Source: Octopus sinensis
Taxonomy: Eukaryota
Assembly (NCBI RefSeq): GCF_006345805.1
Contig: NC_043010.1
Location: 12,648,001 to 12,712,000 of the forward strand
Reading direction: 5' to 3'
DNA: 64,000 nucleotides
Shown: in pieces, positions 1,941 to 23,137 of the stretch
Numbering within the stretch: the stretch's first letter is position 1
Layout: each line of letters opens with the position of its first letter
The notes under the pieces: model-generated
The model's database searches: none
What the model was told of the DNA's origin: nothing
What the model saw: only the letters and a program-made list of their open reading frames with translations
Position numbers and translations under genes: made by a program

Positions 1941-2002
1941 GGATTAAATTCTCATACTTCAAAAAACAAACACAGAAAATTTGAGAAAAGAATTACAATT
2001 AA

Positions 2003-2625: not shown

Positions 2626-2734
2626 ATAATAAATAATTCATAAGTGTTTTAAAATAGGGAATTACTTCCCAATCACAATATTGTTTCTACGAATTTTAGC
2701 AAATTAGTATAATTCTTTCTACTATAGGCACAAG

Positions 2735-2928
2735 GCCTGAAATTTTGGGGGAGGGGACTAGTCGATTACATCGACTCCAGTGTATCACAGGTACTTAATT
2801 TATTGAGCCCAAAAGAATAAAAGGCAAAGTCACCCTTGGCGGAATTTGAACTCAGAATGTAGCGACAGGCGAAATACCACCACGCATTTCGTCCAGCATG
2901 CTAACGATTCTACCAGCTCGCTACCTTA
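2735..2928 (-). mobile_element. SINE family B variant
   Basis: Similarity to other family B copies. Confidence 0.75.
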
Positions 2929-2965
2929 GCAAATTAGTATAATGCTACCTCTATGAAATCCTTTA

Positions 2966-3290
2966 TTAACACTTTTGTTACCATATTTCTATTGACATAC
3001 TCTACTTAATAAATTTTAAGGTTAATCCTTTTATCCTTTTACTTGTTTCAGTCATTTGACTGTGGCCAGGCTGGAGCACTGCCTTGAAGGTTTTTTTTTC
3101 TTTTTAGTCAAACAAATCAATGCCAGGACTTATTTCTTTAAGCCTAGTACTTATTCTATTGGTCTCTTTTTGCCAAACTGATAAATAACAGGGGCGTAAA
3201 CACATTAACACTGGTTGTCAAGTTGCTGGTGGGGGGGGGGAAACAAACCCAGACATAGAGGTACACACATAGATATGTACATATAGACAT

Positions 3291-3327
<37 letters not shown>

Positions 3328-3490
3328 ATAGATCATTAGACACTACACACACATTTTTTTCTCTCCTTGTTTTTTTCTCTCGCTCGAAATGTAAAAGACT
3401 TTTTCTATTCCTGAACGTTATACTAATACATCTGTTTGTTTTGTACAACACCTGTCTTCGTCTTTTGTTTTTTTCGTAAACTCTCCCTAT

Positions 3491-3524
<34 letters not shown>

Positions 3525-3850
3525 ATATATATATATTATATATATATATATATATACATACATATGTGATGGTCAACTCAAGGCTGTAGTAGAAGACATT
3601 TGCCTAAGGTGCCACACAGTGGGATTGAACCCAGAACCATGTGGTTGGGTAGTAAGTTTCTTACCACAAAGCCACACTTGCACCTATTTTAGCAAATTCT
3701 TCAATAAGAATTTACTAAAATAACTTTGTTCATTATTAAGCTGGTGTCTGGAACATAGATTAACATGAAATTTTGATGGCAGGTCTTAATTTAGATCACT
3801 TTATACCAGGAAGTTTGCCTCGTTGAATCAGGAGCAATTTCAGGTGTTTA
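2966..3850. mobile_element. TTAA-type MITE relic interrupted by SINE A
   Basis: Starts TTAA-cacttttgttacc, like the TIR of the 45395-45617 element; appears to resume at ~3686 after the SINE. Confidence 0.45.
3031..3685 (-). mobile_element. SINE family A with secondary insertion (~3350-3490)
   Basis: Family A head and tail present; extra T-rich segment inside the internal microsatellite. Confidence 0.75.
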
Positions 3851-3854
3851 GGAT

Positions 3855-4555
3855 GAATGTAAGATCGTGAGTTCAATTCCTGGTGGTGCGCTATGCCTTG
3901 AGCAAGACACTTTATTTCACGTTGCTCCAGTCCACTCGTCTGGCAAAAATGAGTTGTACTTTTAATTCAAAAGGGTCAGCATTGTCACATTCCATGTCAG
4001 ACTGAATCTCTCTGAGAGCTATGTTAAGGGTGTGCATGTCTGTGGAGTGCTCAACCACTTGCACATTAATTTCATGTTCGGATCTTTTCGGTTTGAACGG
4101 CAGTTTTTTAAAATAATTTCCATGTAACTAAACACTTTTAAACTTTGTATACTGGTAGAATGTGTTTATAAAACATCTTTTTCTCTTGGCTTTATTGAGA
4201 AAATTCTATAGTTTGTAAGATATTTGTTGTTTTTTTTCTTCAATTTCTGCAATTTCAACCAATCAATGATGTCTATTGAGGTAAAAAACATTCTGTGCCC
4301 TATGAATATGTCCCTCGTTTAAGAAACAGATTGGGTTTATTTACATTTGTGAAGAAAAAAAGATACCCTTCCCCCCACCCCTAACCCTAACCCTAAAACA
4401 GATTGAAATGCAATAGATCGATACTAGGGTCATAATTATGGGTGACAATTTCATATGACACCGATAGCAAAAACTGCTGTTCAAACCGAAAAGATCCTCA
4501 TGTTCTTTCACTGATTGAATCAACTGGAATTCTTGTCATCATAATTGATGGAGAG
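3855..4555 (+). mobile_element. tRNA-derived SINE family D, interrupted by a TIR element
   Basis: Matches 14873-15192; the sequence resumes after 4505. Confidence 0.7.
4080..4497 (+). mobile_element. Non-autonomous TIR element, 8-bp TSD, internal (CCCTAA)3
   Basis: TIRs GGATCTTTTCGGTTTGAAC / GTTCAAACCGAAAAGATCC; TSD TCATGTTC at 4072-4079 and 4498-4505. GG-starting TIR with 8-bp TSD fits Merlin or hAT (superfamily not resolved). Confidence 0.85.
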
Positions 4556-4987
4556 ACAGGCTAATATGCAAGGGGTTAGGTAAATGCAGGTTCAAACTTC
4601 AGCTCACAAGCATTCAATAAATTCACATCAGTTTCAAGATTTGAGTCACTTATAAATAATAAAGAAGAGGAAAATAATACTGGAGCTAACAAAAACAAAC
4701 TCTATGACAGGTTAGGTGATTTATAGTTTTGTATTTACTCTGTCATAACAGTGAAAGGCCTTCAAGCAAATATACAGTAGAATTAACAGTGGATGTGATT
4801 TCAAATTGCAGCTAACAGGTGATCATTTCTTTACCCCACAACCATCTCATGTGACACATGTATATTTATGAGATAAATATTTATTATTTGAACAATGCTA
4901 ACAAATGAATTCTTTAATACCTAAGCTATGATAATAGTAACGAAAGTATTTGGAAAATAAAATGTATGAATAATGACAGTGTTTATA

Positions 4988-5586
4988 CCTATTTATTTAC
5001 TACCCACAAGGGGTTAAACACAGAGGGGACAAACAAGGACAGACAAACGGATTAAGTCCATTACATTGACCCCAGTGCATAACTGGTACTTAATTTATCA
5101 ACCCCGAAAGGATGAAAGGCGAAGTTGACCTCGGTGGAATTTGAACTCAGAACGTAACGGCAGACGAAATACTTATTTCTTTACTACCCACAAGGGGTTA
5201 AACACAGAGAGGACAAACAAGGACAGACAAACGGATTAAGTCGATTACATCGACCCCAGTGCGTAACTGGTACTTAATTTATCAACCCCGAAAGGATGAA
5301 AGGCGAAGTTGACCTCGGTGGAATTTGAACTCAGAACGTAACAGCAGACGAAATACCTATTTCTTTACTACCCACAAGGGGTTAAACACAGTGGGGACAA
5401 ACAAGGACAGACAAACGGATTAAGTCGATTACATCGACCCCAGTGCGTAACTGGTACTTAATTTATCGACCCCGAAAGTATGAAAGGCGAAGTCGACCTC
5501 GGCGGAATTTGAACTCAGAACGTAACAGCAGACGAAATACGGCTACGCATTTCGCTCGGCATGCTAACGTTTCTGCCAGCTCGCAG
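4988..5586 (-). mobile_element. SINE family B head-to-tail trimer (184-bp period)
   Basis: TACCCACAAG at 5001, 5185 and 5369; single tRNA-like head at ~5540-5586. Confidence 0.85.
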
Positions 5587-5659
5587 ATGCTTATACCATT
5601 AAAATAATATACGTGATGGGATTAGGTATAACAGTTATTGCAGGGTTTGAGAAAATATG

Positions 5660-6070
5660 TGCAGGTATAGCTGTGTAGTTATGAAGTCCACTTCCCAACC
5701 ACATGGTTTCAGGTTCAGTCCCACTGTGTGACACTTTGGGTGTCTTCTACTATAGCTTCAGGCTGACCAAAGCCTTGTGAGTGGATTTGGTAGATGGAAA
5801 CTGAAAGAAGCCCATCGATTATATATCTACATGTGTGTGTGTATGTGTGCATGTGTATGTATGTGTGTGTTTGTACCCCATCACTGATTGAAAACCATTG
5901 TTAGTGCGTTTACAACCTTGTAACTTAGTAGTTCAGCAAAAGGTACTGATAGAATAAGTACCAGGCTTAAAATGATAATAAGGGGTTGATTCATTCAACT
6001 AAAATCCTTCCAGGTGGTTTCTCACTCACCACGGCCACAGTCCAATGACCGAAACAAGTAAAAGATAAAA
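5660..6070 (+). mobile_element. SINE family A (diverged)
   Basis: Family similarity. Confidence 0.75.
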
Positions 6071-6399
6071 AATAAATGAAATGGTTCCTTGGATTGCTCA
6101 TAAATATTCCTGGCAATAGTTTGTCCATATTTGGATGCTATTGATGTGCAGTGAAAGGCAGAATGATAGAGTAGGCAAAAGAAGGAGACTAAACTTTGAA
6201 GATTCGACTTAATTCTTTTAACCCTCTAAAAGATTTTGCTATATTTCTTAGGCAAAGCCTTTAGGAATGTCTATAAACTAAACATTACTTGGAAAGAGTT
6301 TCTATAAGTGTATTGTTGGGGTGAAGCTTAATTAAACATGTTGTTTGCATTGTAGAATGGCAAAAGAAGAATGCAACACTTAGAGGTTGTTTATGAGTA

Positions 6400-6750
6400 T
6401 ATATATATATATTGTGTGTGTGTGTGTATGTAAAAATATAAAATACAAAATGAGACAAGAAAACAAAACATCCAGACAGTTAGATGATACACAAAAGGAA
6501 CAACAAAACATCCAGATAGACGATACAAAAAAACAAGGACAGGTCATTCGAGTTCCAGATTATCTTTGCAATTTCAGCTGTTTATACTCGAGATTGCTCC
6601 AATATGGTCAACCCCAAGGAAAAAACTAAGCTCAGAGCATTAGATTCCTTGGAATAAAGTAGCGAATATATACGAAAACAAGGATGGAAAAAAAATGGAG
6701 AATGTTACACAAATACAAATAACAGGACATAACAACAGGTGTATATACAT
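6400..6750 (-). mobile_element. Unclassified repeat inserted in a TA/TG tract (possibly Penelope pLTR-type)
   Basis: Composition and TA-flanked ends resemble 34450-34652 and 35822-36018; no clear ribozyme core. Confidence 0.3.
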
Positions 6751-7029
6751 ATTTATGGAGAGAAAGAGAGAGAGAGGGGGAAAGTGAAAGTGGGAGAGAG
6801 AACCTACATATGCTTTGGATTTATTAATAATATCTTTAGATCTTTAGTCATATTGAAATTTTGAGAATTGCTATTATTATTAAATCAGGGTATTGGCTCA
6901 GTTACTAGAATATTGGGCAAAATTAATTATACTCCAAACCTAAATTTCTCATTTTATGCCTACAGAAGAGATTTTTAACATGCACACATATACAGAAACA
7001 CACAAACACACACACGTAAAGACACCCAT

Positions 7030-7350
7030 ACATACATATATATAATGCTGAGACCCCCTTCAGTCATGACTGACCATGGAATTGCACCTAAAGAGTTACC
7101 CGCCCAGGGACAAGTCTGGGCAAGGTTGTTTTTATGGAAGACCAGCAGTCACCCATGCATACCGGCCTCCTCTCTCCATACCACCAGTGTTATCCAAGGG
7201 AAAAGCAAAGGGGCCGAAACAGCTTGGCACCTGTGACATTGCAGCGTGAACTGGAGCAACGTGAAATAAAGTGTCTTGCTCAAGAATACACCACACAGCC
7301 TATCCGGGATTTGAACTCACAACCTCATGATTGTAAGCTCGACGCTCTAA
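7030..7350 (-). mobile_element. tRNA-derived SINE (head related to family D)
   Basis: Minus strand tggctcagtggttagagcgtcgagc...gtgagttcaaatccc (A and B boxes), then cttgagcaagacactttatttcacg. Confidence 0.75.
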
Positions 7351-7568
7351 CCACTGAGCCATGAACCTTCATATATATATATATATACATATATATGTTA
7401 TATATACCTGTGTTATTCATACATATATACACATATATATAAATGCATTATTATGCTAGCATGGAAAGCAGACGTTAAACGATGATGATGATGATGATAT
7501 ATATGTTATACATACATGTATGTGTACATATATATATACATATATATATATGTATGTATATATGTATG

Positions 7569-7603
<35 letters not shown>

Positions 7604-8053
7604 ATATGACTTTGTAGTGGGGAGGTTCCCTGTCCAACTTGATGGTTTGACTTATATCAAAATGTCTGGCCGCCAGGGCAAGTTTTTTCTATGTGTGTGT
7701 GTGTATGTGTGTGTGTTATGCATACATAATATATATATATATGCACACACACACACGCACGCACATACACATGTTTACATACACTTTCACACACACATGT
7801 ATGCACACACTCGTACAGATATATAAAACTAGAACTGGTGAGCTCTTAAATACATCCTCACTAGTCCTATAAGAAGAAATTATCTTCAAATGTATAAATG
7901 TGCCCTCCTTCTCTTTATGTCTTGAGTACCATATTACAGCTCTTTGATTGTACACACACGCGCACACATGCACACATATGTGCATATATCTATGCTTATT
8001 ATTTATATGCATATATACATAGATATATACACACATATATGCCCATACATCAA

Positions 8054-8105
<52 letters not shown>

Positions 8106-8175
8106 AATGAATATGGTACTTAAGTTAGATGCACCAGAATTTTGTATGGTGTTATCCATATAAATCCATGGGGTG

Positions 8176-8258
<83 letters not shown>

Positions 8259-8403
8259 CGAGATAGATAGATAGATATATGACTTTGCGGTTAAGAAGTT
8301 CCCTGCCCAACTAGATTGTTTTGAGTCAAGTCAAAATGTCTGGCAGCTAGGGCAAGTTTCTTCTACTGCGCATAGATTTAGTAGATAGAACCCAAAAGAA
8401 GCC

Positions 8404-8435
<32 letters not shown>

Positions 8436-8920
8436 TGCTGATTAGTAAATAATGACTTCTTCTTAGTACCCTTTCCGTGCAGTCTGTCACAAAAGTATAA
8501 TTTGGTTTCTTGCCATGTCTTCGCATGTTGCATGATGTTTGCAAAAAAAAAAATGGTTCTTTTAAAAAGTGCCATTTATTTCCAGGTATTTGCATAGAAC
8601 ATGACGTGACTGTCTGTTGGTTTGACTTATATCAAAATGTCTGGCCGCCAGGGCAAGTTTTTTCTATGTGTGTGTGTGTATGTGTGAAAGACTGGAAGAT
8701 TTTTATTTTGTATGGAAACAAGTGACAGGAGGGGTATCCAGTCATAAAAACTTTCTAGACCAAAAGTCCTCATCTGACCCATGCAAGCATGATAAAGCAG
8801 GCATTAGACAATATGATGATGATGATATACACACACACACACACACAACACACATACACACACCACACACACACACCACACACACATACACACACACACA
8901 AATATATTTAGATATAGATA

Positions 8921-9303
8921 TAATCCAAATTTAGGGAATGGAGAAGGTAAAATCTAGGTTACATATGTTTCTTAACGAGCAGAACCTCAGAAGTAATAAT
9001 TATTCAATGAGGGGTACTCTGCTAGCGAACTCATCAGGCCGAGGATACCTTAGTCAAATGAATGTTACATTGCCGTCAAGGGATCCCATGTTAACACACA
9101 GGAGATCTGATTGATCAAGTCTCCTGTGAGTTAACAGGAGCTTCCTTGATGACAATATAACCTTCATTTGACTAAGGTATACTCTGCCTAATGAGTAGCT
9201 AGTGAAGTACCCCTCCTTGAATAATTACTACTTCCAAGATTCTGCTTGCTAGGAAACATATGTAATCTGGATATTACGTGCTCCACTCTTTTAATTTGGA
9301 TTA
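8921..9303. repeat. Old foldback/inverted repeat, ~187-bp arms, ~80% identical, very short spacer
   Basis: Manual alignment of the left arm (taatccaaatt...caggagatct) to the reverse complement of the right arm gives ~36 differences; TA-flanked. Confidence 0.9.
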
Positions 9304-9433
9304 TATATATATATAATATATAAGTAGGTGAATGAATTATCCTAGTATTGATATACATATATATATATATATAATATACCTATTTGCATAAACCTTCTTC
9401 AGCATATCAAGCTTTGATATGAGAAAAATTTAC

Positions 9434-9808
9434 GTGTGGTAAGTAGCTTGCTTACCAAACACATGGTCCTGGGTTCAGTCCCATTGCGTGGCACCTTGGG
9501 CAAGTGTCTTCTATTATAGCCTCAGGCCAACCAAAAACCTTGTGAGTGGATTTGGTAGATGGTAAGTGGAAGAAGGCCATTGTATATGTATATATATATA
9601 TGTATATGTTTGTGTGTTTGTCCCTTCAGCATCGCTTCACAACCAATGCTGGTGTGTTAACATCCCCATAACTTAGCAGTTTGGCAAAAAGAGATTGATA
9701 GAATAATTTCTAGGCTTACAAAGAATAATCTCTGGGGTCGATTTGCTCGATTAAATGGCAGTGCTCCAGCATGGCTGCAGTCAAATGACTGAAACAAGTA
9801 AAAGAGTA
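9434..9808 (+). mobile_element. SINE family A
   Basis: Family similarity. Confidence 0.8.
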
Positions 9809-9981
9809 ACATACTACATCAATAAACCACTATCGCTCTGAAAGTTGTTTTTTACACCTTCTGCAAACTGCTTCATGCTTACTAACATCTTCTACTGGGA
9901 TCCATGTCTCTGAACTTTACATAAATTATATATAGATAAATATGTATAGATAAATATACATATATATATACATATATATAT

Positions 9982-10333
9982 ATCATATAAAATCTGTTCA
10001 GTCTGTCTGTGTGTGTGTCTTCTAGGATCTTGGGCATCCTCCATCCGATTGTGCTCAAATTTGATATGTAGATACCGACGGTATCAGGGCATGTAAAAGT
10101 CTTGAAAAAATTACAAAAATCGATTTCAAGTGAGAATGCGATCGATAAAGCTGTTTTTCTTTGAAATAGAAAAAAGTCTATCTATATTCTTCTTTTGCTG
10201 GTGTCTCAAATTTAGGTTAAATCAGTGTTTCTCAAAGGGGAGGCCTATGGGACGGTCGGACAAGTTGTTTTGAGAAAATTTGGTTTAAATGTTTGACACC
10301 AGCACCGTCCATTGGACAGGGTCGTTTTGCTTG
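9982..10333 (+). mobile_element. Probable non-autonomous Helitron (diverged)
   Basis: 5' ...TATAAAATCTG-(TCTG/TG)n start; 3' hairpin ccGTCC-att-GGACagg followed by CTTG|T (degenerate CTAG). Confidence 0.5.
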
Positions 10334-10366
10334 TATATATATATATATTATTTATATATATATATG

Positions 10367-10429
<63 letters not shown>

Positions 10430-10787
10430 ATATATATATAATATATGTATATATATATTGTGTGTGTGCATGGTAGAGGGGCTCCTTGTCAGAAACAATA
10501 GAGTTCTTGCTATTCCTTACTGAACAACCTGTATATATGATTTGCTTACAGTGATCAAATGTATATGTTGTGATTTAGCTCATTCCCTCCATCAAATTGA
10601 CCTTGTTTGTTCTAGAGCATCCTTGAAGTGATTGCAGAGCAAAGGGAAATGAAGAGTTTTTACTCAAGAAAACGATGCTCTGCCTGATCAAGGAATTGAA
10701 ATCACAACCTTGTGATATAGAGATGTGAGGCTTAGTGGTAAGAGTATCATAGTCATGGTCACAAGATCATAGAATCAATTCATATAT

Positions 10788-11173
10788 AGGCACAGGAGTG
10801 GCTGTGTGGTAAGTAGCTTGCTAACCAACCACATGGTTCCGGGTTCAGTCCCACTGCGTGGCACCTTGGACAAGTGTCTTCTACTATAGTCTCGGGCCGA
10901 CCAAAGCCTTGTGAGTGGATTTGGTAGACGGAAACTGAAAGAAGCCTGTCGTATATATGTATATATATATGTGTATGTGTGTGTGTGTGTTTGTCCCCCT
11001 AGCATTGCTTGACAACCGATGCTGGTGTGTTTATGTCCCCGTCACTTAGCGGTTCGGCAAAAGAGACCAATAGAATAAGTACTGGGCTTACAAAGAATAA
11101 GTCCCGGGGTCGATTTGCTCGACCAAAGGCAGTCAAATGACTGAAACAAGTAAAAGAGTAAAAGAGTAAAGAG
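10788..11173 (+). mobile_element. SINE family A (young), ~270 bp beyond the protocadherin stop
   Basis: Near-consensus copy. Confidence 0.9.
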
Positions 11174-11440
11174 TATATGCATGAGAAAGAAAAAGAGAGA
11201 AGAGAGAGAGAGAGATAGAGAGGAAGGGAGAGAGGTATATACCTTTACATGCACATGCGCACACACAAATATATTGAAATCTATAAATGTATTTAGAGAG
11301 ATTCGTAGATTGTGGAAACAGGACCCTAGGATGCCCTTTATGCAAAAGCATTTCAGTATTATCTATGGTGGATGTGTCCTTACAACACTTTTGCGGCTAA
11401 TCTAAACAACACAGAGTTTCAATAGATAATTAGACTCAAG

Positions 11441-11599
11441 CTATATACCTGGTATCTCTTCATATGGGCTTGTATCATTTTTATTCACTCTATGGCTATA
11501 TTTTCTACTCATGGATACATTATTACGATAATAGTCCGGAGATGGTAAGTGTTTGCCGTGAATTCTGCCAGATGTACCTCCAACTTCTTGTATACAAGC
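11441..11599 (-). CDS. Pcdh: Probable terminal coding exon of the protocadherin: ACIQEVGGTSGRIHGKHLPSPDYYRNNVSMSRKYSHRVNKNDTSPYEEIPGI*
   Basis: Strong acceptor on the minus strand (tttttcttcatttcctttttgttgtcaaag|GCT). Open for 52 codons in phase 0, matching the phase-0 donor at 27514. Non-repetitive sequence, TAG at 11443-11441. Confidence 0.75.
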   Translation of the reverse strand, partial: ACIQEVGGTSGRIHGKHLPSPDYYRNNVSMSRKYSHRVNKNDTSPYEEIPGI

Positions 11600-11829
11600 C
11601 TTTGACAACAAAAAGGAAATGAAGAAAAATATATAGATAGATAGTTAGTTAAAATTATTTGAATAATTTTCAATATTTCTTTATAATTAAGTCCAAAATC
11701 TACTTATACATATGCACACACACATATATATATACACACATGTATATATAAGTATATATAAGTATATATTCATATGTATGTATGTATATATATATATATA
11801 TGTATATATGCAGATATATATATATATAT

Positions 11830-11867
<38 letters not shown>

Positions 11868-12992
11868 CGCATATATATATATACACACACAAACACACAT
11901 ATATATACATACATATATGTAAAACATTCTGGGATCTAATCCAATTTTTGCAAGAAGTTCTAAAATTTAACCAACTCTTTCTCCATGAATCTGATTCTCA
12001 AAAAATAATAAAATAAAATAAAGTAAAATAAAACAAAAAATATATATATTTATTTGAATAAAATAAAATAAAATTATATATACATATACATACATATATA
12101 TATATATATATGTATTGAAAAATAATTTTTTATATCAATTTAATGTTGAAATTTTCATTTCAAATAAAACGGCCTATTCTATTAAATTTTTGAGGAATGT
12201 TGCTCTTTATTTTTATTTTCTCAAAGAATCCTGCTATTTGCCTTAAAGCAAATCACAACTGTACATTCGGCTAGCGAAAAGCACGACTAAATCTTTTATC
12301 AACTCTTTCTTTCATATTTTTTAACAGTGCGGCAGACAAAGTGAAAATGCTTGTTGATGATGCATGACAACACGCAGTCATGTTGATGCTACTGCAAAAA
12401 CTTGAAAATAATTTCATGAAATAAATAACAATTGTTCTTCAAAGAATAAAATATCTTGCCTGTGATAATAAAGTAACAAAGGAATGGTTTCTTTGTTCAT
12501 TCATCTCATTCTTCAACTCTTATTTATTCCTTTTTTTGTTTGTTAGCTTTGTTTTCTTTTTCTCTCTTGAATCTGGATTAAAACTTCTATTCAATTAACG
12601 TGGAGGCCTCATTTAGTTGGTTTAATCAGTGGTATATAATTTAATAATATGCTTTAAAGAACACCATAATATGTGTGTGTGTGTAGGTGTGTAGGTGTGT
12701 GTGTGTGTAGGTGTGTGTGTGTGTAGGTGTGTGTAGGTGTGTGTGTGTGTGTGTTTTGTACATAAGTTGTTTCTCTGTGTTTATGTATAAATGTGTGTAT
12801 GTAAATAGGTAAATGTACTCAAATATATGTGTGTGTGGTTTTGTGAGTGTATGTTTACGTACATATGTGTATGCATGTCTATCTGTACTCATGACAATAT
12901 TTCTTAAACTGTTTAGTAAGAGATATAGCAACAATAACTAAGTAATAATGACGATGATAATGATGATGATGATGATGATGATGACGATGACG

Positions 12993-13039
<47 letters not shown>

Positions 13040-13169
13040 AATAATAATAAAAAGGTTGAATCTGCAGGAAAATAGATGAGAGTATCGATCATATTTTGAG
13101 TGAGTGCAGTATGCCAGCACAAAAGGAGTATAAGCACAGACATGACTGTATAAGCAAAGGAGTGCATTG

Positions 13170-13660
13170 GCATGTTAGCCAAGTGTATGTCTTCAAAACA
13201 TCAAAGGAGTGGTATGAACATGAACAAGGAGCCACGATAGAAAATGAAAATTACAAGATCTAGTGGGGCTTCACCATAAAGACTAACCATAGTATTGAGA
13301 CAAGAAGATGAAACATGATTATAGGGGACAAAATAAACAAGCACATAGTTCATGGATTTTGCAACACCCTATGATAGCAGAGTCAATACCAAGGAAAATT
13401 AACAAAATCAAGAAATACCAAGATCTAGCTAGAGAGCTGAGGAGTCTGTGGAAGGCCAAGACAATAATTATTCCTGTAATATCTGGTGCACTTGGCACAA
13501 CATCCAAAATGCTACCTCAAAGACTGAAAGAAATTGGAGTTCGCAACTCACATTGTTGACTGGCAGAAAAGTAACATCCAATATTTTGCCAGAATCCCAA
13601 GAAAGATTCTTGAGATCTGAGGAGACAAAATACTCACTAACTAAATTAGCATGCACTAGT
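13170..13660 (+). mobile_element. R4/Dong-like non-LTR retrotransposon relic (restriction-like endonuclease region), (AAT)n tail
   Basis: Frames give KKIKKYQDLARELRSLWKAKTIIIPVISGALGT; preceded by WGFTIKT-like sequence. Confidence 0.7.
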
Positions 13661-13744
13661 GAAATACTACTACTACTAAAAATAATAATAATATAATAAT
13701 AATAATAAATAATAATAATAATAATAATAAATAATAATAATAAT

Positions 13745-14310
13745 AAAGTGCTTAAAAATGATCACATCTCACTCCTCTGGAACTTCACCATTCAAACTGA
13801 CAGAAAGATAGACGTGAATAGGCCAGACATTATATTGAAAGACTTCAGACAAAAATCATGCCTCCTCATGACTCCCAATCGATATAAATGTATCTGTCAA
13901 GACCTACCAAAAACTGAGCAAGTATAAAATAGAAAGCGGCAAAATGTGGAACGTCAAGACTAAAACAATACTTGTTGTCGTAGGTGCCCAAGGAATGATA
14001 GCAAAAGGGGTTGATTGCTACCTAACTCAGATACCAGGAAGCACCAAAATGGCAGCAATTCAAAAGATAGTGCTCATGGGAACTGCCCATATCCTACGTA
14101 AAATACTGTCTATGTAATCTCAAATTTTAATACAAACTCATAATTGTCTTGTTTGCTTAAACATTCTCTAGAACAATACTATGTATAAAATCAAATATAT
14201 GGCACCCTAGGCATAACACCAACATGAACTTATAACTTGTTTCTTGGGGTCTCTAGGTGAGACTTGGAGCCAACTTGTACAAATACAAAGCAAAAGTCAA
14301 ACATATAATA
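13745..14310 (+). mobile_element. R4/Dong-like LINE relic (RLE domain plus 3' UTR)
   Basis: LLWNFTIQTDRKIDVNRPDIILKD...KTKTILVVVGAQGMI...IVLMGTAHILRKILSM*. Confidence 0.8.
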
Positions 14311-14872
14311 ATAATAATAATACATACATGTATGTATATGGTTCAAAATCGTACAAAAAAAGCCAAAAAACAATAAGGGGACAGCAAACTAGGCCGATTA
14401 ATTTGACACCCAGGAAAAACGGAATAGTCTTTGACATTTTGAGCTTATGCTCTTCTACAGGAAAGAATGAGGAGAGAAAACAGGTGGAGAGAAGAAAAAT
14501 GGAGAGAGAAATAAAACATGTCTGGATTGATGGCTGCACACACACACGCACACACACACACACACATACACAAACACACACACTCATAATACATACATTT
14601 ATTTACATGATATATGTAATAATGTATGAATGCTTACATACCGCTTCTTCACACGAAAATGTTTGTACAAACAAATAACATTATAATGACATTCCCTCTC
14701 AGTAAATCATTGTGTAGCTCTTTGCTTTTGAAGACATATGGAATGTAAAGTCTCTTAGAATTAATGACAGGAAATACATCCAGTTCTGAAATAATGTCTC
14801 AATAATAAGTGTTTGCCCAACTTATACTAGGTGGATGCATGTGTCTTAGCAGTTAGGGTGTTGGAATGGGTG

Positions 14873-15192
14873 AGGGCGTGTGGCTTAGTGGTTAGGGCAT
14901 TCGGCTCATGATCGTAAGGTTGTGAGTTCGATTCCCGGCGACGCGTTGTGTCCTTGAGCAAGACACTTTATTTCACGTTGCTCCAGTCCTCTCAGCTGGC
15001 AAAAATGAGTTGTACTTGTATTTCAAAGGGTCAGCCTTGTCAGTCTCTGTGTCACGCTGATTATCCCCGAGAACTAAGTTAAGGGTACACGTGCCTGTGG
15101 AATGCTCAGCCATTTGCACATTAATTTCACGAGCAAGCTGTTCCGTTGATCGTATCAGCTGGGACCCTCGTCGTCGTAACCGGCGGAGTCTT
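14873..15192 (+). mobile_element. tRNA-derived SINE family D
   Basis: tggcttagtggttagggc...gagttcgattcc (A and B boxes). Confidence 0.85.
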
Positions 15193-15409
15193 TAAAGGGT
15201 GTTGGACTCATGATTATAAGATTGTGGTTTCAGAAACTGAGAAACCAGCGCTTATGAGTCTGTATGACTTGAGAAGATAACTTTACCTTTATCTAACTAA
15301 TGTTAAGCATGGAAAAACTGAAAATAAAACAAACAAATTGATAGCCCTTAATCGCCCTTAATAGTATGCCAGTGAAGCAACATTCTCACAATAGTTTAGA
15401 TGGGGCAGG

Positions 15410-15715
15410 GTAAGTTCAGCTGGATGCCCTTCCCAATGCCAACCACCCTGTGAGTGTAGTGGGTGCTTTTTACGTGCCACCGGCACAGGTGCCAGGCGAG
15501 GCTGGTAACGACCACGATCGGTTAGTGCTTTTTACATGCCACCGGCACGGAGGCCAGTCAAGGCGGTGCTGGCAATGGCCACGCTAGGATGGCTCTTTTA
15601 CGTGCCACCATCACAGGTATCACAACTACAATTTCCATTGATTTTTGATCGATTTCGATTTCACTTGCCTCAACAGGTCATTGCAAGCAGAGTCTTGTGT
15701 CCCAAGAAGGAAATG
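15410..15715 (-). mobile_element. RTE-like 3' portion (same family as 2003-2625)
   Basis: Family similarity. Confidence 0.75.
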
Positions 15716-15724
15716 TATGCATAA

Positions 15725-16272
15725 GTGGACTGGCTACATCCCGGGTAAAGGCCACGGGTTATGGTCTCACGTAGAAAGCAAGTATTTGAACATACTGACA
15801 AATGGTGTGAACATGAACCTAGTAAAGTACTAGAAGGCAAGAAATATAAGATGTTGTGTGACTTCAACATTCAGACTGACAGAGTAATAGAAGCTAGAAG
15901 TCCTGATTTGGTAGAAGTAGATAAAGAGAATAGAAAGTGCCAGATAATTGACTTTACATTAATATGAGAAGTATAGAAAAAATAGCAAAGTACCAGGACC
16001 AAGCTATTGAATGACAGAAACTATGGAAAGTACGGGTAAAATATATCCCAGTAAGTTATAGGTGCATTGGGAACTATCCCTAAAGATCTGAGCAGATGGA
16101 TAGAGGAAATAGGCATAAAACCCAGTTTAGTACAACTGCGGAAAATAATGTTATTAGGGACAGCTAGGATACTTAGGAGGGTTCTTGGCATCTAAGGTTA
16201 CTTGTAGCCCAATGTTAGAATTTTTTCTTTTCCAACAGTTTAATTTATTGAGTGTATATGAAAATAATAATA
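15725..16272 (+). mobile_element. R4/Dong-like LINE relic (RLE domain)
   Basis: HEPSKVLEGKKYKMLCDFNIQTDRVIEARSPDLVEVDKENRKCQIIDF (PD...D motif region); AAT tail. Confidence 0.8.
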
Positions 16273-16276
16273 ATAT

Positions 16277-19115
16277 TAAATGCCCTGATGCAGTACCAGA
16301 CAGTGGCTCTCATCGCTTCTGATCTTAAATGATAGGAAATGTTATCATGTACATTGTTTTGTCTTGGTATAAAAAGATGGGCTACAGCAAATATTCTGCC
16401 CCACACCACAGTTGAGCATGTCCCTTAGTGACTGACAATATGTGCATCTCTGATCATGAACAGAAGTAGTGGGGGAGCATCATAGCCATGTGTTGAGAAG
16501 AATTCTTTGGGGTTTGGATAATTCACCTCTGGAAACATGAATGTTTTGTTCTACATCTTTAAATTACACTTATTCAGGGACCTTTTGAATTCGGATGGGC
16601 TACTCGACTTGAAGAAAAATTCCAACTGGGCCTCACCTGCAAGGTCATGTGCTGTTTTGTTCTACATCCTTAAACTACCCTTATTCAGGGACCTTTTGAA
16701 TTTGGATGGGCTACTCGACTTGAAGAAAATTCCAACTGGGCTTCACCTGCAAGGTCATGTGCTGTTTTGTTCTACATCCTTAAACTACCCTTATTCAGGG
16801 ACCTTTTGAATTTGGATGGGCTACTAGACTTGAAGAAAATTCCAACTGGGCTTCACCTGCAAGGTCATGTGCTGTTTTGTTCTACATCCTTAAACTACCC
16901 TTATTCAGGGACCTTTTGAATTCGGATGGGCTACTAGACTTGAAGAAAATTCCAACTGGGCCTCACCTGCAAGGTCATGTGCTGTTTTGTTCTACATCCT
17001 TAAACTACCCTTATTCAGGGACCTTTTGAATTCAGATGGGCTACTAGACTTGAAGAAAATTCCAACTGGGCCTCACCTGCAAGTCATGTGCTGTTTTGTT
17101 CTACATCCTTAACTACCCTTATTCAGGGACCTTTTGAATTCGGATGGGCTACTAGACTTGAAGAAAATTCCAACTGGGCCTCACCTGCAAGGTCATGTGC
17201 TGTTTTGTTCTACATCCTTAAACTACCCTTATTCAGGGACCTTTTGAATTCGGATGGCTACTAGACTTGAAGAAAATTCCAACTGGGCCTCACCTGCAAG
17301 GTCATGTGCTGTTTTGTTCTACATCCTTAAACTACCCTTATTCAGGGACCTTTTGAATTCAGATGGGCTACTAGACTTGAAGAAAATTCCAACTGGGCCT
17401 CACCTGCAAGGTCATGTGCTGTTTTGTTCTACATCCTTAAACTACCCTTATTCAGGGACCTTTTGAATTCGGATGGGCTACTAGACTTGAAGAAAATTCC
17501 AACTGGGCCTCACCTGCAAGGTCATGTGCTGTTTTGTTCTACATCCTTAAACTACCCTTATTCAGGGACCTTTTGAATTCGGATGGGCTACTCGACTTGA
17601 AGAAAATTCCAACTGGGCTTCACCTGCAAGGTCATGTGCTGTTTTGTTCTACATCCTTAAACTACCCTTATTCAGGGACCTTTTGAATTCAGATGGGCTA
17701 CTCGACTTGAAGAATAATTCCAACTGGGCCTCACCTGCAAGGTCATGTGCTGTTTTGTTCTACATCCTTAAACTACCCTTATTCAGGGACCTTTTGAATT
17801 CAGATGGGCTACTCGACTTGAAGAAAATTCCAACTGGGCTTCACCTGCAAGGTCATGTGCTGTTTTGTTCTACATCCTTAAACTACCCTTATTCAGGGAC
17901 CTTTTGAATTTGGATGGGCTACTAGACTTGAAGAAAATTCCAACTGGGCTTCACCTGCAAGGTCATGTGCTGTTTTGTTCTACATCCTTAAACTACCCTT
18001 ATTCAGGGACCTTTTGAATTCGGATGGGCTACTAGACTTGAAGAAAATTCCAACTGGGCCTCACCTGCAAGGTCATGTGCTGTTTTGTTCTACATCCTTA
18101 AACTACCCTTATTCAGGGACCTTTTGAATTCAGATGGGCTACTAGACTTGAAGAAAATTCCAACTGGGCCTCACCTGCAAGGTCATGTGCTGTTTTGTTC
18201 TACATCCTTAAACTACCCTTATTCAGGGGCCTTTTGAATTCGGATGGGCTACTAGACTTGAAGAAAATTCCAACTGGGCCTCACCTGCAAGGTCATGTGC
18301 TGTTTTGTTCTACATCCTTAAACTACCCTTATTCAGGGACCTTTTGAATTCGGATGGGCTACTAGACTTGAAGAAAATTCCAACTGGGCCTCACCTGCAA
18401 GGTCATGTGCTGTTTTGTTCTACATCCTAAACTACCCTATTCAGGGACCTTTTGAATTCAGATGGGCTACTAGACTTGAAGAAAATTCCAACTGGGCCTC
18501 ACCTGCAAGGTCATGTGCTGTTTTGTTCTACATCCTTAAACTACCCTTATTCAGGGACCTTTTGAATTCGGATGGGCTACTAGACTTGAAGAAAATTCCA
18601 ACTGGGCCTCACCTGCAAGGTCATGTGCTGTTTTGTTCTACATCCTAAAACTACCCTTATTCAGGGACCTTTTGAATTCGGATGGGCTACTCGACTTGAA
18701 GAAAATTCCAACTGGGCTTCACCTGCAAGGTCATGTGCTGTTTTGTTCTACATCCTTAAACTACCCTTATTCAGGGACCTTTTGAATTCAGATGGGCTAC
18801 TCGACTTGAAGAATAATTCCAACTGGGCCTCACCTGCAAGGTCATGTGCTGTTTTGTTCTACATCCTTAAACTACCCTTATTCAGGGACCTTTTGAATTC
18901 AGATGGGCTACTCGACTTGAAGAATAATTCCAACTGGGCCTCACCTGCAAGGTCATGTGCTGTTTATCTTAGTATGACATCACCATGTCACACACATATG
19001 GTTGGGAAGCATGTGTCTGGTGTATACTTATTGGACAGGTAGTCATGATATGTGAACTGGGCTTCGTATATTTAACCCCGCTGTCACTTTAATGGCATGC
19101 ACTGCTCTCCCACTC
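16277..19115 (+). mobile_element. Dispersed retroelement hosting the 110-bp satellite
   Basis: Unique 5' flank, amplified internal segment, and 3' part matching the single-unit copy at 21285-21552; ends in (AAT)n. Confidence 0.65.
16542..18964. repeat. Tandem satellite, 110-bp unit, 22 copies
   Basis: Unit tgttttgttctacatccttaaactacccttattcagggaccttttgaattcggatgggctactagacttgaagaaaattccaactgggcctcacctgcaaggtcatgtgc; period 110 (e.g. 16741 vs 16851). Confidence 0.97.
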
Positions 19116-20222
19116 AATAATAATAGTAATGATAATAATAATAATAATGATAATAATAATAATAATGATAATAATGATAATAATAATGATAATAATGATA
19201 ATACTGATAATAATAATAATAATGATAATAATAATAATAATAATGATAATAATAATAATATGATAAATAATAATAAATAATGATAATAATAAATAATAAT
19301 GATAATAATAATAATAATGATAATAATAATGATAATACTGATAATAATAATAATAATGATAATAATAATAATAATAATGATAATAATAATAATAATGATA
19401 ATAATAATAATAATGATAATAATATAATAATAATGATAATAATAATAATAATGAATAATAATAAATAATGATAATAATAATAATAATAATAATGATAATA
19501 ATAATAATAATGATAATAATAATATAATAATGATAATAATAATAATAATAATGATAATAATAATAATAATGATAAAATAATAATAATGATAATAATAATA
19601 ATAATAATAAATAATAATAATAATGATAATAATAATAATAATGATAATAATAATAATAATAATGATAATAATGATAATAATGATAATAATAATAATAATA
19701 ATGATAATAATAATAATAATGATAATAATAATAATAATGATAATAATAATAATAATAATGATAATAATAATAATAATGATAATAATAATAATAATAATGA
19801 TAATATAATAATAATGATAATAATAATAATAATAATGATAATAATAATAATAATGATAATAATAATAATAATAATGATAATAATAATAATAATAATGATA
19901 ATAATAATAATAATGATAATAATAATGATAATGATAATAATAATAATATTGATAATAATATAATAATAATGATTAATAATAATAATAATAATGAATAATA
20001 ATAATAATGATAATAATAATGATAATGATAATATAATAATAATAATGATAAAATAATAATAATGATAATAATAATGATAATGATATAATAATAATAATAA
20101 TGATAATAATAATAATAATGATAATAATAATGATATACTGATAATAATAATAATATAATGATAATAATAATAATAATAATGATAATAATAATAATAATGA
20201 TAATAATAATAATAATGATATA

Positions 20223-20253
<31 letters not shown>

Positions 20254-21284: not shown

Positions 21285-21552
21285 AACGTGGGTGTTTTGT
21301 TCACATCTTTAAACAACCATTATCCAGGAACTTTTTGAGCGGGATGGGCTACTCAACCTGAAGAAAATTCTAACTGGATCCTACCTGCAAGGTAATGTGC
21401 TGTTTATCTTGATATGAGATCACCATGTTGCACACATATAGTTGTGATGCACGTGCCTGGTGTACCCTCATTAGACGGGTAATCATGAGTATACTGGGCT
21501 TCATATATTTTACCCCCGTGTCACTTTGATGGCATGCACTGATCTCCCGCTC
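21285..21552 (+). mobile_element. 5'-truncated second copy of the satellite-host element with one diverged unit
   Basis: tgttttgttcacatctttaaacaaccattatccagg...ctgcaaggtaatgtgctgtttatctt...gatggcatgcactgatctcccgctc then AAT tail. Confidence 0.85.
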
Positions 21553-22839: not shown

Positions 22840-22893
<54 letters not shown>

Positions 22894-23000: not shown

Positions 23001-23031
<31 letters not shown>

Positions 23032-23040
23032 TAGATAGAC

Positions 23041-23137
<97 letters not shown>

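What the first reader, a model, noticed from the sequence alone, without database searches (positions are those of the whole stretch)
11441..11599. Hidden distal exon gives the protocadherin a C-terminal YEEIP (Src-SH2-type) motif
Seen: a strong minus-strand acceptor opens a 52-codon phase-0 frame matching the phase-0 donor 15.9 kb away, ending ...NDTSPYEEIPGI*, with further Tyr in PDYY and RKY. Established: pTyr-Glu-Glu-Ile is the optimal Src-family SH2 ligand, and the polyoma middle-T peptide is pYEEIP. Inference: this protocadherin may couple adhesion to Src-family signalling through a motif on a separately spliced exon, so splicing or intronic polyadenylation would switch the docking site on or off. 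The exon is absent from the ORF track. I recall similar YEE[IL]P tails in other octopus protocadherins but cannot verify this here.
Basis: partly seen in the sequence, partly recalled or inferred. Interest (0 to 1): 0.75.

Follow-up and report, generated by a model that had tools for sequence, protein, structure and literature searches.

The report
Octopus protocadherin exon ending YEEIP
The "hidden" exon is real but already annotated: a 151-base alternative exon of an Octopus sinensis protocadherin that ends in a tyrosine motif (YEEIP) shared by most related octopus protocadherins, which might dock Src-type kinases but has never been tested.

Summary
The sequence is as described: acceptor at 11601-11600, open frame ACIQ...SPYEEIPGI*, and a phase-0 donor at 27514. 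The window is Octopus sinensis CM016872.1.

The exon is not hidden. RefSeq isoform X1 (XP_029645232.1, 867 aa) joins 27514 to 11599. So do the O. bimaculoides models, including a UniProt entry from the 2015 annotation.

The annotated exon is 151 nt (11599-11449). Isoform X2 skips the exon and reads the same terminal exon in another frame.

The exon, its phase and both splice sites are conserved in Argonauta hians.

YEE[IL]P occurs in 46 of the 120 closest homologues, and Y-[ED]-[EDT]-[IL]-x in 73. In the seven mapped genes it is always the last five codons of the exon, before a phase-1 donor. It is the only strongly conserved block in a tail that AlphaFold2 leaves unstructured.

Cuttlefish homologues keep x-[ED]-E-[ILM]-P but lack the tyrosine.

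SH2 or Src docking is plausible and untested. A YxxΦ sorting signal and a tyrosine-independent reader remain open. I found no paper describing the motif.

The parts
27514..29928 (-). Exon 1 coding part of the protocadherin (805 codons). It encodes the signal peptide, Cadherin_2 plus cadherin repeats, the TM helix and 82 aa of membrane-proximal cytoplasmic tail, and ends ...KSIPASTQ at a phase-0 donor.
   Evidence: Translation. Pfam Cadherin E=2.5e-72 with 5 stretches, and Cadherin_2. 100% identical to residues 1-805 of XP_029645232.1 on L001.
27760..27840 (-). Transmembrane segment INLVIIIVVTAVVISIAIVVIITICIV (residues 697-723).
   Evidence: Read directly from the translation. The equivalent segment in paralogue P0004 is modelled as a single long helix, 689-726.
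27507..27517 (-). Donor of intron 1, ACAG|GTAAGTT; the last exon base is 27514.
   Evidence: This junction is used in annotated isoforms X1 and X2.
11600..27513 (-). Intron 1 (15,914 nt). It contains a 110-bp x 22 tandem repeat (16542-18965) and about 2.2 kb of (AAT)n (19116-21285).
   Evidence: Exon mapping; Tandem Repeats Finder.
11600..11659 (-). Acceptor region: polypyrimidine tract tcttcatttcctttttgttgtcaaAG. These 60 nt are 70% identical to the Argonauta hians orthologue, against 43% further upstream.
11449..11599 (-). The 151-nt cassette exon (exon 2). It enters in phase 0 and leaves in phase 1, and encodes ACIQEVGGTSGRIHGKHLPSPDYYRNNVSMSRKYSHRVNKNDTSPYEEIP plus the first base (G) of the next codon.
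   Evidence: It is in XP_029645232.1 (O. sinensis), XP_014782248.1 and A0A0L8GDS1 (O. bimaculoides). The Argonauta orthologous exon is 139 nt, with two in-frame 6-nt deletions, the same phase and the same splice sites.
11450..11464 (-). The YEEIP motif (TAT GAA GAG ATA CCA), residues 851-855 of isoform X1, 128 residues after the TM segment. These are the last five full codons of the exon.
   Evidence: The same position at the exon end was found in the seven genes mapped on nine loci, with synonymous variation: TAT/TAC, GAA/GAG, ATA/ATC/ATT/TTA. In an alignment of 36 segments picked because they carry the relaxed motif, it is the only invariant or near-invariant block (Y, E); an alignment of 45 tails chosen without regard to the motif gives the same block.
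11404..11448 (-). Donor of intron 2 (GTATAT, a weak match to GTRAGT) plus 45 nt of intron that is 67% identical to Argonauta, against 33% further on. This is a candidate intronic splicing-control element.
11441..11448 (-). Read-through codons G-I-stop (GGT ATA TAG, using the last exon base 11449). They are translated only if the GTATAT donor is not used.
   Evidence: This form is not in any annotated model of this gene. There is no AATAAA or ATTAAA within 2.1 kb downstream. The same kind of read-through end is annotated in paralogues P0004 (GM*) and P0038 (GML*).
1..11448 (-). First 11.4 kb of intron 2, which is 25,137 nt in all. The terminal coding exon lies about 13.7 kb beyond window position 1, at L001 53618-53692 (CM016872.1, from about 12,634,311 downwards).
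   Evidence: The tail peptides VLPLPTRKAPYF and FYHCQPEK... are absent from the window and present at L001 53618.

Best explanation
Shown. Window 11599-11449 (minus strand) is the second coding exon of an Octopus sinensis protocadherin (RefSeq 'protocadherin beta-16', isoform X1 XP_029645232.1).

- It is a 151-nt cassette exon. When included, it adds 50 residues of unstructured cytoplasmic tail ending in YEEIP, and shifts the shared terminal exon into the frame V-LPLPTRKAPYF*.
- When skipped (isoform X2), the tail is FYHCQPEKPLIFEKQLCQETNAKQ* and has no YEEIP.
- The exon is gene-specific. Each paralogue locus has one copy of its own, so it is not a shared constant exon.
- Its last five codons, Y-E-[E/T]-[I/L]-[P/S/A], are the one strongly conserved block of the octopod protocadherin cytoplasmic tail.

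Inferred. The motif is a short linear motif read by a cytoplasmic partner. In octopods the most likely reading is a tyrosine-phosphorylation-dependent docking site for an SH2 protein of the Src-family specificity class (pY-E-E-I). Exon inclusion would then couple this adhesion receptor to tyrosine-kinase signalling, and exon skipping would uncouple it.

The proline-like residue at +4 is largely imposed by the splice donor, because the codon must be NCA followed by G|GT.

Confidence differs by layer. For the anatomy (exon, isoforms, conservation) it is at least 0.95. For the SH2-docking function it is about 0.4. The figure given is for the whole statement.
For: Identity and splicing:
- Window 1-39928 is 100% identical to CM016872.1.
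- P0121 (X1) maps as exon 1, then 11599-11449, then the terminal exon. P0125 (X2) maps as exon 1, then the same terminal exon in frame 0.
- Both isoforms also exist in the O. bimaculoides RefSeq and 2015 models. The skipped form exists in the separate O. vulgaris annotation.

Coding conservation:
- The Argonauta orthologue keeps the acceptor, the donor and the phase, and its indels are multiples of three.
- Intron sequence flanking the exon is conserved, as is typical of regulated cassette exons.
- The part of the terminal exon that codes only in the X2 frame shows 3 synonymous and 1 non-synonymous codon change against Argonauta.

Motif:
- Exact YEE[IL]P in 46 of 120 homologues, relaxed form in 73 of 120.
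- It lies at the exon end before a phase-1 donor in all seven genes mapped (O. sinensis, O. bimaculoides, Argonauta), with synonymous codon variation that argues for selection on the peptide.
- In an unbiased alignment of tails, the Y, E, E, I and P columns score 22-27 of 26-28 occupied rows, against 13 or fewer of 26 for neighbouring columns.

Accessibility:
- No Pfam domain in the tail.
- An AlphaFold2 model of paralogue P0004 has pLDDT 23-28 and no secondary structure from residue 727 to the end.

Reader plausibility:
- pYEEI is the optimal Src SH2 ligand, and a choanoflagellate Src SH2 binds it at 140 nM. The specificity therefore predates animals (PMC5876402, PMC7337045).
- Vertebrate Pcdh-alpha binds Fyn (cited in PMC6339937). 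Clustered Pcdh tails bind FAK and Pyk2 (PMC7339444).
- Long paralogues also end in [KR]PLPx[VL]P, and cuttlefish ones in RPLPPLP. From my own knowledge this is the class I SH3-ligand consensus.
Against: - No phosphorylation, binding or RNA-seq data could be examined. The isoforms are gene models.
- Cuttlefish homologues carry V, A, S, R, I, G or E at the tyrosine position while keeping [ED]-E-[ILM]-P (VDELP, HREEMP, HIDEMP, QGGEIP, PAEEIT). The older function of this exon end therefore cannot depend on phosphotyrosine.
- The residue at -1 is P, H, Q or L. From my own knowledge, that is not the aliphatic residue Src-family kinases prefer in substrates, so the kinase is unknown.
- Y-E-E-I also fits YxxΦ and the LIR core.
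- SH2 sequence preferences are only about 100-fold selective (PMC7337045).
- In the Argonauta orthologue the motif is YEEIS.
- The E-E codons (GAR GAR) next to a weak donor could also serve as a purine-rich splicing enhancer.
Confidence: 0.45

Rival explanations
1. The motif is a YxxΦ tyrosine-based sorting signal. Adaptor-complex mu subunits (AP-2 and relatives) would read it in its unphosphorylated state and control endocytosis or intracellular retention of the protocadherin. Exon skipping would change surface residence, not signalling.
For: Y-E-E-I and Y-E-T-L both fit Y-x-x-Φ. The motif lies in an unstructured, accessible tail. Trafficking control through the cytoplasmic tail is a known theme for vertebrate protocadherins (my own knowledge; PMC7339444 reviews the tail interactors).
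Against: YxxΦ tolerates almost any residue at +1 and +2. Here +1 is E in 76 of 82 sequences and +2 is E or T in 77 of 82. That is more constraint than a sorting signal needs. Cuttlefish homologues lack the tyrosine that such a signal requires.
Confidence: 0.2
2. The conserved unit is the older coleoid [ED]-E-[ILM]-P exon end. Either an unknown tyrosine-independent partner reads it, or it is conserved at the RNA level as a purine-rich splicing enhancer next to the CAG|GT donor of a weakly spliced exon. On this view the octopod tyrosine is an add-on of minor or different function.
For: Cuttlefish (Acanthosepion pharaonis) and unnamed Logan and ENA homologues keep x-[ED]-E-[ILM]-P without tyrosine. 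The +4 residue varies only among P, S, A and T, all NCA codons, as the CAG|GT donor demands. The donor GTATAT is weak, and intron sequence next to it is conserved.
Against: Within octopods the tyrosine is the most conserved residue. It is invariant in a 36-segment alignment chosen for carrying the motif, and both TAT and TAC are used. The +3 position changes codon family (ATA, ATC, ATT, TTA) but stays aliphatic, and D replaces E in some sequences. Both point to selection on the peptide, not the RNA.
Confidence: 0.2
3. The motif is an LC3/GABARAP-interacting region (core [WFY]-x-x-[LIV] with acidic residues) that directs the receptor to autophagic turnover.
For: Y-E-E-I fits the LIR core, and acidic residues are typical of LIRs (my own knowledge; motif).
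Against: No acidic run is conserved upstream of the tyrosine. The match is purely a pattern match, and nothing here was tested.
Confidence: 0.05
4. One reading: the main product ends ...YEEIPGI*. The exon would be a terminal exon whose transcript ends shortly after 11441, and the GTATAT donor would be unused.
For: The frame does stop after two more codons. RefSeq models of paralogues end in exactly this read-through way: P0004 YEEIPGM* and P0038 YEEIAGML*.
Against: All annotated models of this gene in O. sinensis and O. bimaculoides use the donor. The donor and 45 nt after it are conserved in Argonauta. There is no AATAAA or ATTAAA within 2.1 kb downstream.
Confidence: 0.1
5. The frame is a chance open reading frame behind a chance acceptor and is not an exon.
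For: Five equally good acceptor-plus-frame candidates exist on the strand.
Against: It is annotated in two Octopus species, conserved in frame in Argonauta, and homologous to the second exon of dozens of paralogues.
Confidence: 0.01

Closest known systems
Src-family SH2 ligands of the pY-E-E-I class (the hamster polyomavirus middle-T-derived phosphopeptide used in structures 1SPS and 1LCJ; cellular example FAK pY397, Y-A-E-I)
   Same: The residues from 0 to +3 are identical (Y-E-E-I), and here +4 is also P, as the finding notes. The motif sits in an unstructured cytoplasmic segment of a membrane protein (PMC7337045, PMC5876402).
   Different: Phosphorylation and binding have not been shown. 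The motif sits at an exon end, and +4 is constrained by the splice donor. Cuttlefish relatives lack the tyrosine.
Vertebrate clustered protocadherin cytoplasmic domains (the alpha and gamma constant regions that bind Fyn, FAK, Pyk2 and the WAVE complex)
   Same: A protocadherin ectodomain and TM segment encoded by one large exon, with the distal cytoplasmic tail added by downstream small exons. There is a link to non-receptor tyrosine kinases (PMC6339937 citing Kohmura 1998; PMC7339444).
   Different: The octopus downstream exons are gene-specific, not shared constant exons. Each of nine loci (seven genes) has its own copy and the sequences differ, in agreement with PMC9068888. The tails show no sequence similarity to vertebrate ones, and published searches found no vertebrate CM1-3 motifs (PMC6339937).
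Delta-protocadherin short linear motifs (CM3 RRVTF for PP1-alpha; the WIRS motif for the WAVE complex)
   Same: Short conserved peptide motifs in otherwise divergent, disordered protocadherin tails that recruit one cytoplasmic effector (PMC6339937, PMC7339444).
   Different: The sequence and the presumed partner differ. YEE[IL]P is not in the published list of octopus-specific motifs (EC1, EC5, EC6, TM, PP1; Table S2 of PMC6339937).
YxxΦ adaptor-binding sorting signals
   Same: The pattern Y-x-x-aliphatic in a cytoplasmic tail.
   Different: The strong conservation of the acidic +1 and +2 residues is not a feature of that class.
Bipartite SH2-plus-SH3 ligands that activate Src-family kinases (FAK, p130Cas, Sin/Efs)
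   Same: Twelve of the 120 homologues have both Y-E-[ET]-L-x and, 69-128 residues further on, a [KR]PLPx[VL]P class I SH3-type motif.
   Different: The gene in this window does not have the distal motif in either annotated isoform. The resemblance rests on consensus patterns recalled from memory and was not tested.

Membership tests
Octopod expanded (clustered-type) protocadherins | N-terminal Cadherin_2 domain plus tandem cadherin repeats, a single TM segment and a short cytoplasmic tail | tested here: met
   Pfam Cadherin E=2.5e-72 (5 stretches) and Cadherin_2 E=3.9e-11. TM at residues 697-723.
Octopod expanded (clustered-type) protocadherins | One large exon encodes the whole ectodomain and TM segment; the genes are multi-exonic with their own 3' exons | tested here: met
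   805-codon exon 1. Own exon 2 and terminal exon. Agrees with PMC9068888.
Octopod expanded (clustered-type) protocadherins | Identity to annotated members | tested here: met
   The window-encoded exons are 100% identical to XP_029645232.1. 99% to O. bimaculoides A0A0L8GDS1 and 87% to the Argonauta orthologue.
Vertebrate-style variable-exon / shared-constant-exon protocadherin cluster | Many variable first exons spliced to one shared set of constant exons | tested here: not met
   Exon-2 sequences differ between paralogues (19-55% identity to this gene's exon 2). Each of nine loci (seven genes) has exactly one such exon of its own.
Alternative cassette exon | Isoforms with and without the exon that use the same flanking exons | tested here: met
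   X1 (867 aa) and X2 (829 aa) in O. sinensis and O. bimaculoides, and the skipped form in O. vulgaris and Argonauta. All are gene models.
Alternative cassette exon | Junction reads for both inclusion and skipping in RNA-seq | not testable with these tools
   No read-level data are available. cDNA-sized Logan contigs show the homologous exon spliced in cuttlefish transcripts only.
Alternative cassette exon | Conserved intron sequence flanking the exon | tested here: met
   70% (60 nt upstream) and 67% (45 nt downstream) identity to Argonauta, against 43% and 33% further out.
Src-family SH2 docking site (pY-E-E-I class) | Sequence Y-[E/D/T]-[E/N/D/T]-[I/V/M/L] | tested here: met
   Y-E-E-I at residues 851-854. 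Conserved in 73 of 120 homologues.
Src-family SH2 docking site (pY-E-E-I class) | Cytoplasmic and accessible (disordered) | tested here: met
   128 residues C-terminal to the TM segment. No domain found. pLDDT 23-28 in the model of paralogue P0004. Low confidence is only indirect evidence of disorder.
Src-family SH2 docking site (pY-E-E-I class) | The tyrosine is phosphorylated in vivo | not testable with these tools
   Needs phosphoproteomics or anti-phosphotyrosine blots.
Src-family SH2 docking site (pY-E-E-I class) | Phospho-dependent binding to a Src-family SH2 domain of the same organism | not testable with these tools
   Needs a binding assay. Only the general conservation of pYEEI preference from choanoflagellates to mammals is documented (PMC5876402).
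YxxΦ sorting signal | Y-x-x-bulky hydrophobic residue in a cytoplasmic tail | tested here: met
   Y-E-E-I.
YxxΦ sorting signal | Binding of the unphosphorylated motif to an AP mu subunit | not testable with these tools
   Needs a binding or trafficking assay.

The most novel reading that the evidence does not exclude
Octopod protocadherins as a family acquired a tyrosine at the end of an older coleoid cytoplasmic exon. This created a pY-E-E-[I/L] SH2 docking site on a dedicated cassette exon in most of the roughly 170 genes. A subfamily pairs it with a class I SH3 ligand. The octopus adhesion code would then be wired directly to Src-family kinase activation. The link would be convergent with the vertebrate Pcdh-alpha/Fyn link. 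It could be switched per gene by exon skipping, and possibly by A-to-I editing of TAT to TGT.
Probability: 0.25. Interest if true: 0.65.

Novelty: new member of a known kind. Interest (0 to 1): 0.4.

Why it matters
Nothing is known about what octopus protocadherins signal to inside the cell. Published surveys found no vertebrate-type cytoplasmic motifs (PMC6339937).

This work points to one concrete entry to that question. A five-residue motif is conserved across most close octopod paralogues, sits on its own alternative exon, and matches the best-characterised SH2 ligand. The proposal can be tested with peptides, recombinant SH2 domains and existing RNA-seq data.

The gene model itself adds nothing new. 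The exon and both isoforms are already in public annotation.

Tried and rejected
- **Tail-only protein search.** A search with the 143-aa spliced tail returned nothing. This was a sensitivity limit of the word index, not absence. The full-length query found the annotated protein at once.
- **Pfam on the exon.** No family matched. The unfamiliar accessions PF28399 and PF28393 attached to homologues are extracellular Ig-like families (Ig_CLSTN, Ig_Cad99C_N). They are not cytoplasmic.
- **Downstream exons in the window.** Peptide searches for VLPLPTRKAPYF and FYHCQPEK... found only chance 4-7-residue matches. The exon lies outside the window.
- **Shared constant exon.** Rejected.
- **Chance ORF.** Rejected.
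- **O. sinensis versus O. bimaculoides comparison for exon-specific conservation.** Uninformative, because the introns are also 88-100% identical. Argonauta was used instead.
- **Other ORFs of at least 150 aa in the window.** All lie in microsatellites and none has a Pfam hit.
- **Literature.** No paper holds both 'YEEIP' and 'protocadherin'. None links octopus protocadherins to SH2. Albertin 2015 and Wang & Ragsdale 2017 could not be read, so a mention in those papers cannot be excluded.
- **Locus look-up for P0013 (YEEIH variant).** Not on record.
- **RNA-editing idea for the CEELP variant of P0018.** The genomic orthologue could not be retrieved.
- **Exon-2 profile search.** The search of 1.84 billion representatives gave only 33 hits and no taxon names. 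Ten were looked up. Taxa outside Octopoda and one cuttlefish remain unassigned.
Full report
**Observation**

On the minus strand the sequence reads ...ttcatttcctttttgttgtcaaag|GCTTGTATACAAG.... The AG is at 11601-11600 and the first exon base at 11599. From there the frame is ACIQEVGGTSGRIHGKHLPSPDYYRNNVSMSRKYSHRVNKNDTSPYEEIPGI*.

The 855-aa ORF at 29928-27361 is a protocadherin: Pfam Cadherin E=2.5e-72 in five stretches, plus Cadherin_2. It has a TM segment at residues 697-723. It contains ACACAG|GTAAGT with the last exon base at 27514, exactly 805 codons from the ATG.

The anatomy alone is not distinctive. Downstream of the donor, 91 AG sites open frames of at least 50 codons, and five of those have a pyrimidine tract as good as this one.

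**What the locus is**

A search with the spliced protein returned 3,629 protocadherins, nearly all named ones from octopods. The best cluster holds XP_029645232.1 (Octopus sinensis 'protocadherin beta-16 isoform X1', 867 aa). Its sequence is identical to the window-encoded exons.

The genomic locus of that protein (L001, CM016872.1) matches window 1-39928 at 100%. The window is therefore O. sinensis CM016872.1:12,648,001-12,712,000.

X1 is built from three pieces:
- exon 1 (29928-27514);
- the exon in question, which ends at 11449 at CCAG|GTATAT (151 nt, phase 1);
- a terminal exon 25,137 nt further on, about 13.7 kb outside the window, read as V-LPLPTRKAPYF*.

Isoform X2 (XP_029645233.1, 829 aa) joins exon 1 directly to the same terminal exon. 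It reads that exon in frame 0 as FYHCQPEKPLIFEKQLCQETNAKQ*.

The same pair of isoforms is present in O. bimaculoides, both in RefSeq (XP_014782248.1 and XP_014782249.1) and among the UniProt entries from the 2015 annotation (A0A0L8GDS1, A0A0L8GCX5). The skipped form is present in the O. vulgaris and Argonauta hians annotations.

So the exon is real, but it is neither hidden nor new. Because YEEIP lies upstream of that donor, the motif is kept either way.

**Independent evidence that the exon codes**

O. bimaculoides is too close to be informative, since its introns are 88-100% identical. The orthologous Argonauta hians locus (L003) is informative:
- The exon is recognisable: ACIQEVGVPCGRVAGKHISSPDYYRSSSNVKASHSTSKHDTYEEIS.
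- It has two 6-nt deletions, so it is 139 nt and keeps phase 1.
- The acceptor and the GTATAT donor are intact.
- Identity is 70% in the 60 nt upstream and 67% in the 45 nt downstream. It falls to 43% and 33% further out. This is the pattern expected of a regulated cassette exon.
- Both reading frames of the terminal exon are open. The stretch that codes only in the X2 frame has three synonymous and one non-synonymous codon change. This suggests the skipped isoform is translated too.

There is no canonical poly(A) signal within 2.1 kb after the exon. That argues weakly against the GI* terminal form for this gene. RefSeq does end some paralogues in exactly that read-through way: P0004 YEEIPGM* and P0038 YEEIAGML*.

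**The motif in the family**

Among the 120 best homologues, 46 contain YEE[IL]P. Seventy-three contain Y-[ED]-[EDT]-[IL]-[PSATH] in the tail, in the forms YETLP, YEEIA, YEELS, YEEIH, YEEIS and YDEIP. Many of the remainder are annotated as alternative isoforms with other tails.

In nine genomic loci, representing seven genes, the motif is always the last five full codons of a gene-specific exon of about 130-160 nt. It is followed by one base and GT: TAY GAR GAR ATH/TTA NCR G|GT. There is exactly one such exon per locus.

Synonymous variation (TAT/TAC, GAA/GAG, ATA/ATC/ATT/TTA) points to selection on the peptide. The residue at +4 (P, S or A in the loci mapped, where the codon is CCA, CCG, TCA or GCA) follows the CAG|GT donor consensus. 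The proline is therefore partly a splicing constraint.

In an alignment of 36 diverse exon-2 segments, selected because they carry the relaxed motif and 17-55% identical to this one, the only invariant column is the tyrosine. The only column at 90% or more is the following glutamate. An alignment of 45 whole tails made without reference to the motif gives the same picture.

The tail has no Pfam domain. An AlphaFold2 model of paralogue P0004, built on a 40-sequence alignment, has a TM helix at 689-726 and then pLDDT 23-28 with no secondary structure to the end. This is what a short linear motif in a disordered tail looks like.

**Beyond octopods**

A profile of exon 2, searched against 1.84 billion representative proteins, found only 33 hits. 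Every hit that could be named and carries the tyrosine is from an octopod: O. vulgaris, O. sinensis, O. bimaculoides or Argonauta.

The named tyrosine-less hit (HREEMS) is from the cuttlefish Acanthosepion pharaonis. Among the cuttlefish-type clusters in the first search (three of the eight hold a named A. pharaonis member), those that carry the homologous exon have VDELP, ADDMS, SREEP or EGEVP at the homologous place. Some of these come from cDNA-sized Logan contigs, which show the homologous exon spliced into transcripts.

The acidic-acidic-aliphatic-proline exon end is therefore older than the tyrosine, or the tyrosine was lost in decapodiforms. The sample is small.

**Mechanism**

Y-E-E-I is the optimal ligand of Src-family SH2 domains once phosphorylated. 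That preference is documented from a choanoflagellate Src (140 nM) to mammals (PMC5876402, PMC7337045). Vertebrate clustered protocadherin tails bind Fyn, FAK and Pyk2 (PMC6339937, PMC7339444).

The strong conservation of E at +1 and E/T at +2 fits an SH2 reading better than a plain YxxΦ signal.

There are reasons for caution:
- Nothing shows phosphorylation.
- The -1 residue (P, H, Q or L) is not what Src-family kinases prefer in substrates (my own knowledge).
- Cuttlefish lack the tyrosine.
- The motif also fits YxxΦ and the LIR core.
- SH2 preferences are only moderately selective (PMC7337045).

I put SH2 docking at about 0.4, a YxxΦ sorting signal at about 0.2, a tyrosine-independent or RNA-level constraint at about 0.2, and the rest small.

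The switch idea, that inclusion or skipping turns the motif on or off, is supported only at the level of gene models. These are conserved in four octopod species.

**Comparison with known systems, and novelty**

The gene is a member of the octopod protocadherin expansion, and all the features I tested are met. It does not have the vertebrate arrangement of shared constant exons (PMC9068888).

The motif is not in the published table of octopus-specific protocadherin motifs (Table S2 of PMC6339937). No held paper contains both YEEIP and protocadherin, and none links octopus protocadherins with SH2. Albertin 2015 and Wang & Ragsdale 2017 could not be read.

The exon and the gene model are already known. 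The family-wide motif and its possible reader amount to a new member of a known kind: a tyrosine-based linear motif on an alternative exon of an adhesion receptor.

**Verdict**

The interest is moderate. It lies in a testable hypothesis about octopus protocadherin signalling, not in a new exon.

Noticed in passing
L001 53618-53692 (about 13.7 kb beyond window position 1, minus strand of the window): The terminal coding exon is read in two overlapping frames, depending on whether the 151-nt exon is included: V-LPLPTRKAPYF* or FYHCQPEKPLIFEKQLCQETNAKQ*. Both frames are open in Argonauta. The part that codes only in frame 0 shows 3 synonymous and 1 non-synonymous change. Paralogue tails such as ...SVLLLPTRIPKR resemble the LP(L)PTR frame.
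   Followed up: partly
Homologues P0037, P0042, P0046, P0047, P0060, P0064, P0066, P0068, P0072, P0078, P0082, P0084, P0085, P0092-P0094, P0105, P0113; cuttlefish P0133, P0149, P0163: A subfamily with longer tails ends in a second conserved block, DVIDLKS...WNLPMRNSFTSY(S/A)KPLPAVPK. Cuttlefish versions end RPLPPLPI or RPLPPVPQ(I/L)LY. [KR]PLPx[VL]P matches the class I SH3-ligand consensus (from memory). Eighteen of 120 homologues have it, twelve of them together with the tyrosine motif 69-128 residues upstream. The gene in this window lacks it.
   Followed up: partly
P0018 (O. vulgaris A0A411DZ08, transcriptome-derived), residues about 843-847: This mRNA-derived protocadherin has CEELP where paralogues have YEELP. 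TAT to TGT is the change A-to-I editing would produce. A preprint notes that editing has been reported to be enriched in octopus protocadherins (10.1101/714394). The genomic orthologue could not be retrieved, so editing, polymorphism and a genuine Cys codon cannot be told apart.
   Followed up: partly
window 27514-28130 (residues about 600-805 of exon 1) versus paralogues P0003 to P0006: The end of EC6, the TM segment and the proximal cytoplasmic part of exon 1 are 80-90% identical to paralogues whose EC1-5 are only 60-65% identical and whose exon 2 is 48-60% identical. This mosaic pattern suggests gene conversion of the 3' part of the big exon. Albertin et al. 2022 propose homogenisation in these clusters.
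   Followed up: partly
window 16542-18965 and 19116-21285 (intron 1): A 110-bp unit is repeated 22 times at 97% identity, followed by about 2.2 kb of (AAT)n (GC 17%). Their function, if any, is unknown.
   Followed up: no
window 24898-25468, 26338-27018, 33074-33571, 40071-41560, 42365-42934, 53156-54699, 55862-57987: Apart from the protocadherin, all ORFs of at least 150 aa on both strands lie in microsatellites: (ATCATC)n, (ATAT)n, (AGAT)n, (TG)n-like, (CAT)n and (TATG)n. None has a Pfam hit, so they are artefacts of the ORF listing.
   Followed up: yes
window 2168-2625 and 4985-5540 (intron 2): Two further tandem arrays, a 61/183-bp unit x 7.5/2.5 and a 184-bp unit x 3. The DVIDL--IR chance hits at 5231-5435 and 63788-63992 suggest that the 184-bp unit recurs near the other end of the window, so it may be an interspersed repeat.
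   Followed up: no
The word-indexed protein search returned nothing for a 143-aa query that is identical to the C-terminal part of a protein in the database. Short queries can be missed by that tool, so an empty result from it should not be read as absence.
   Followed up: yes
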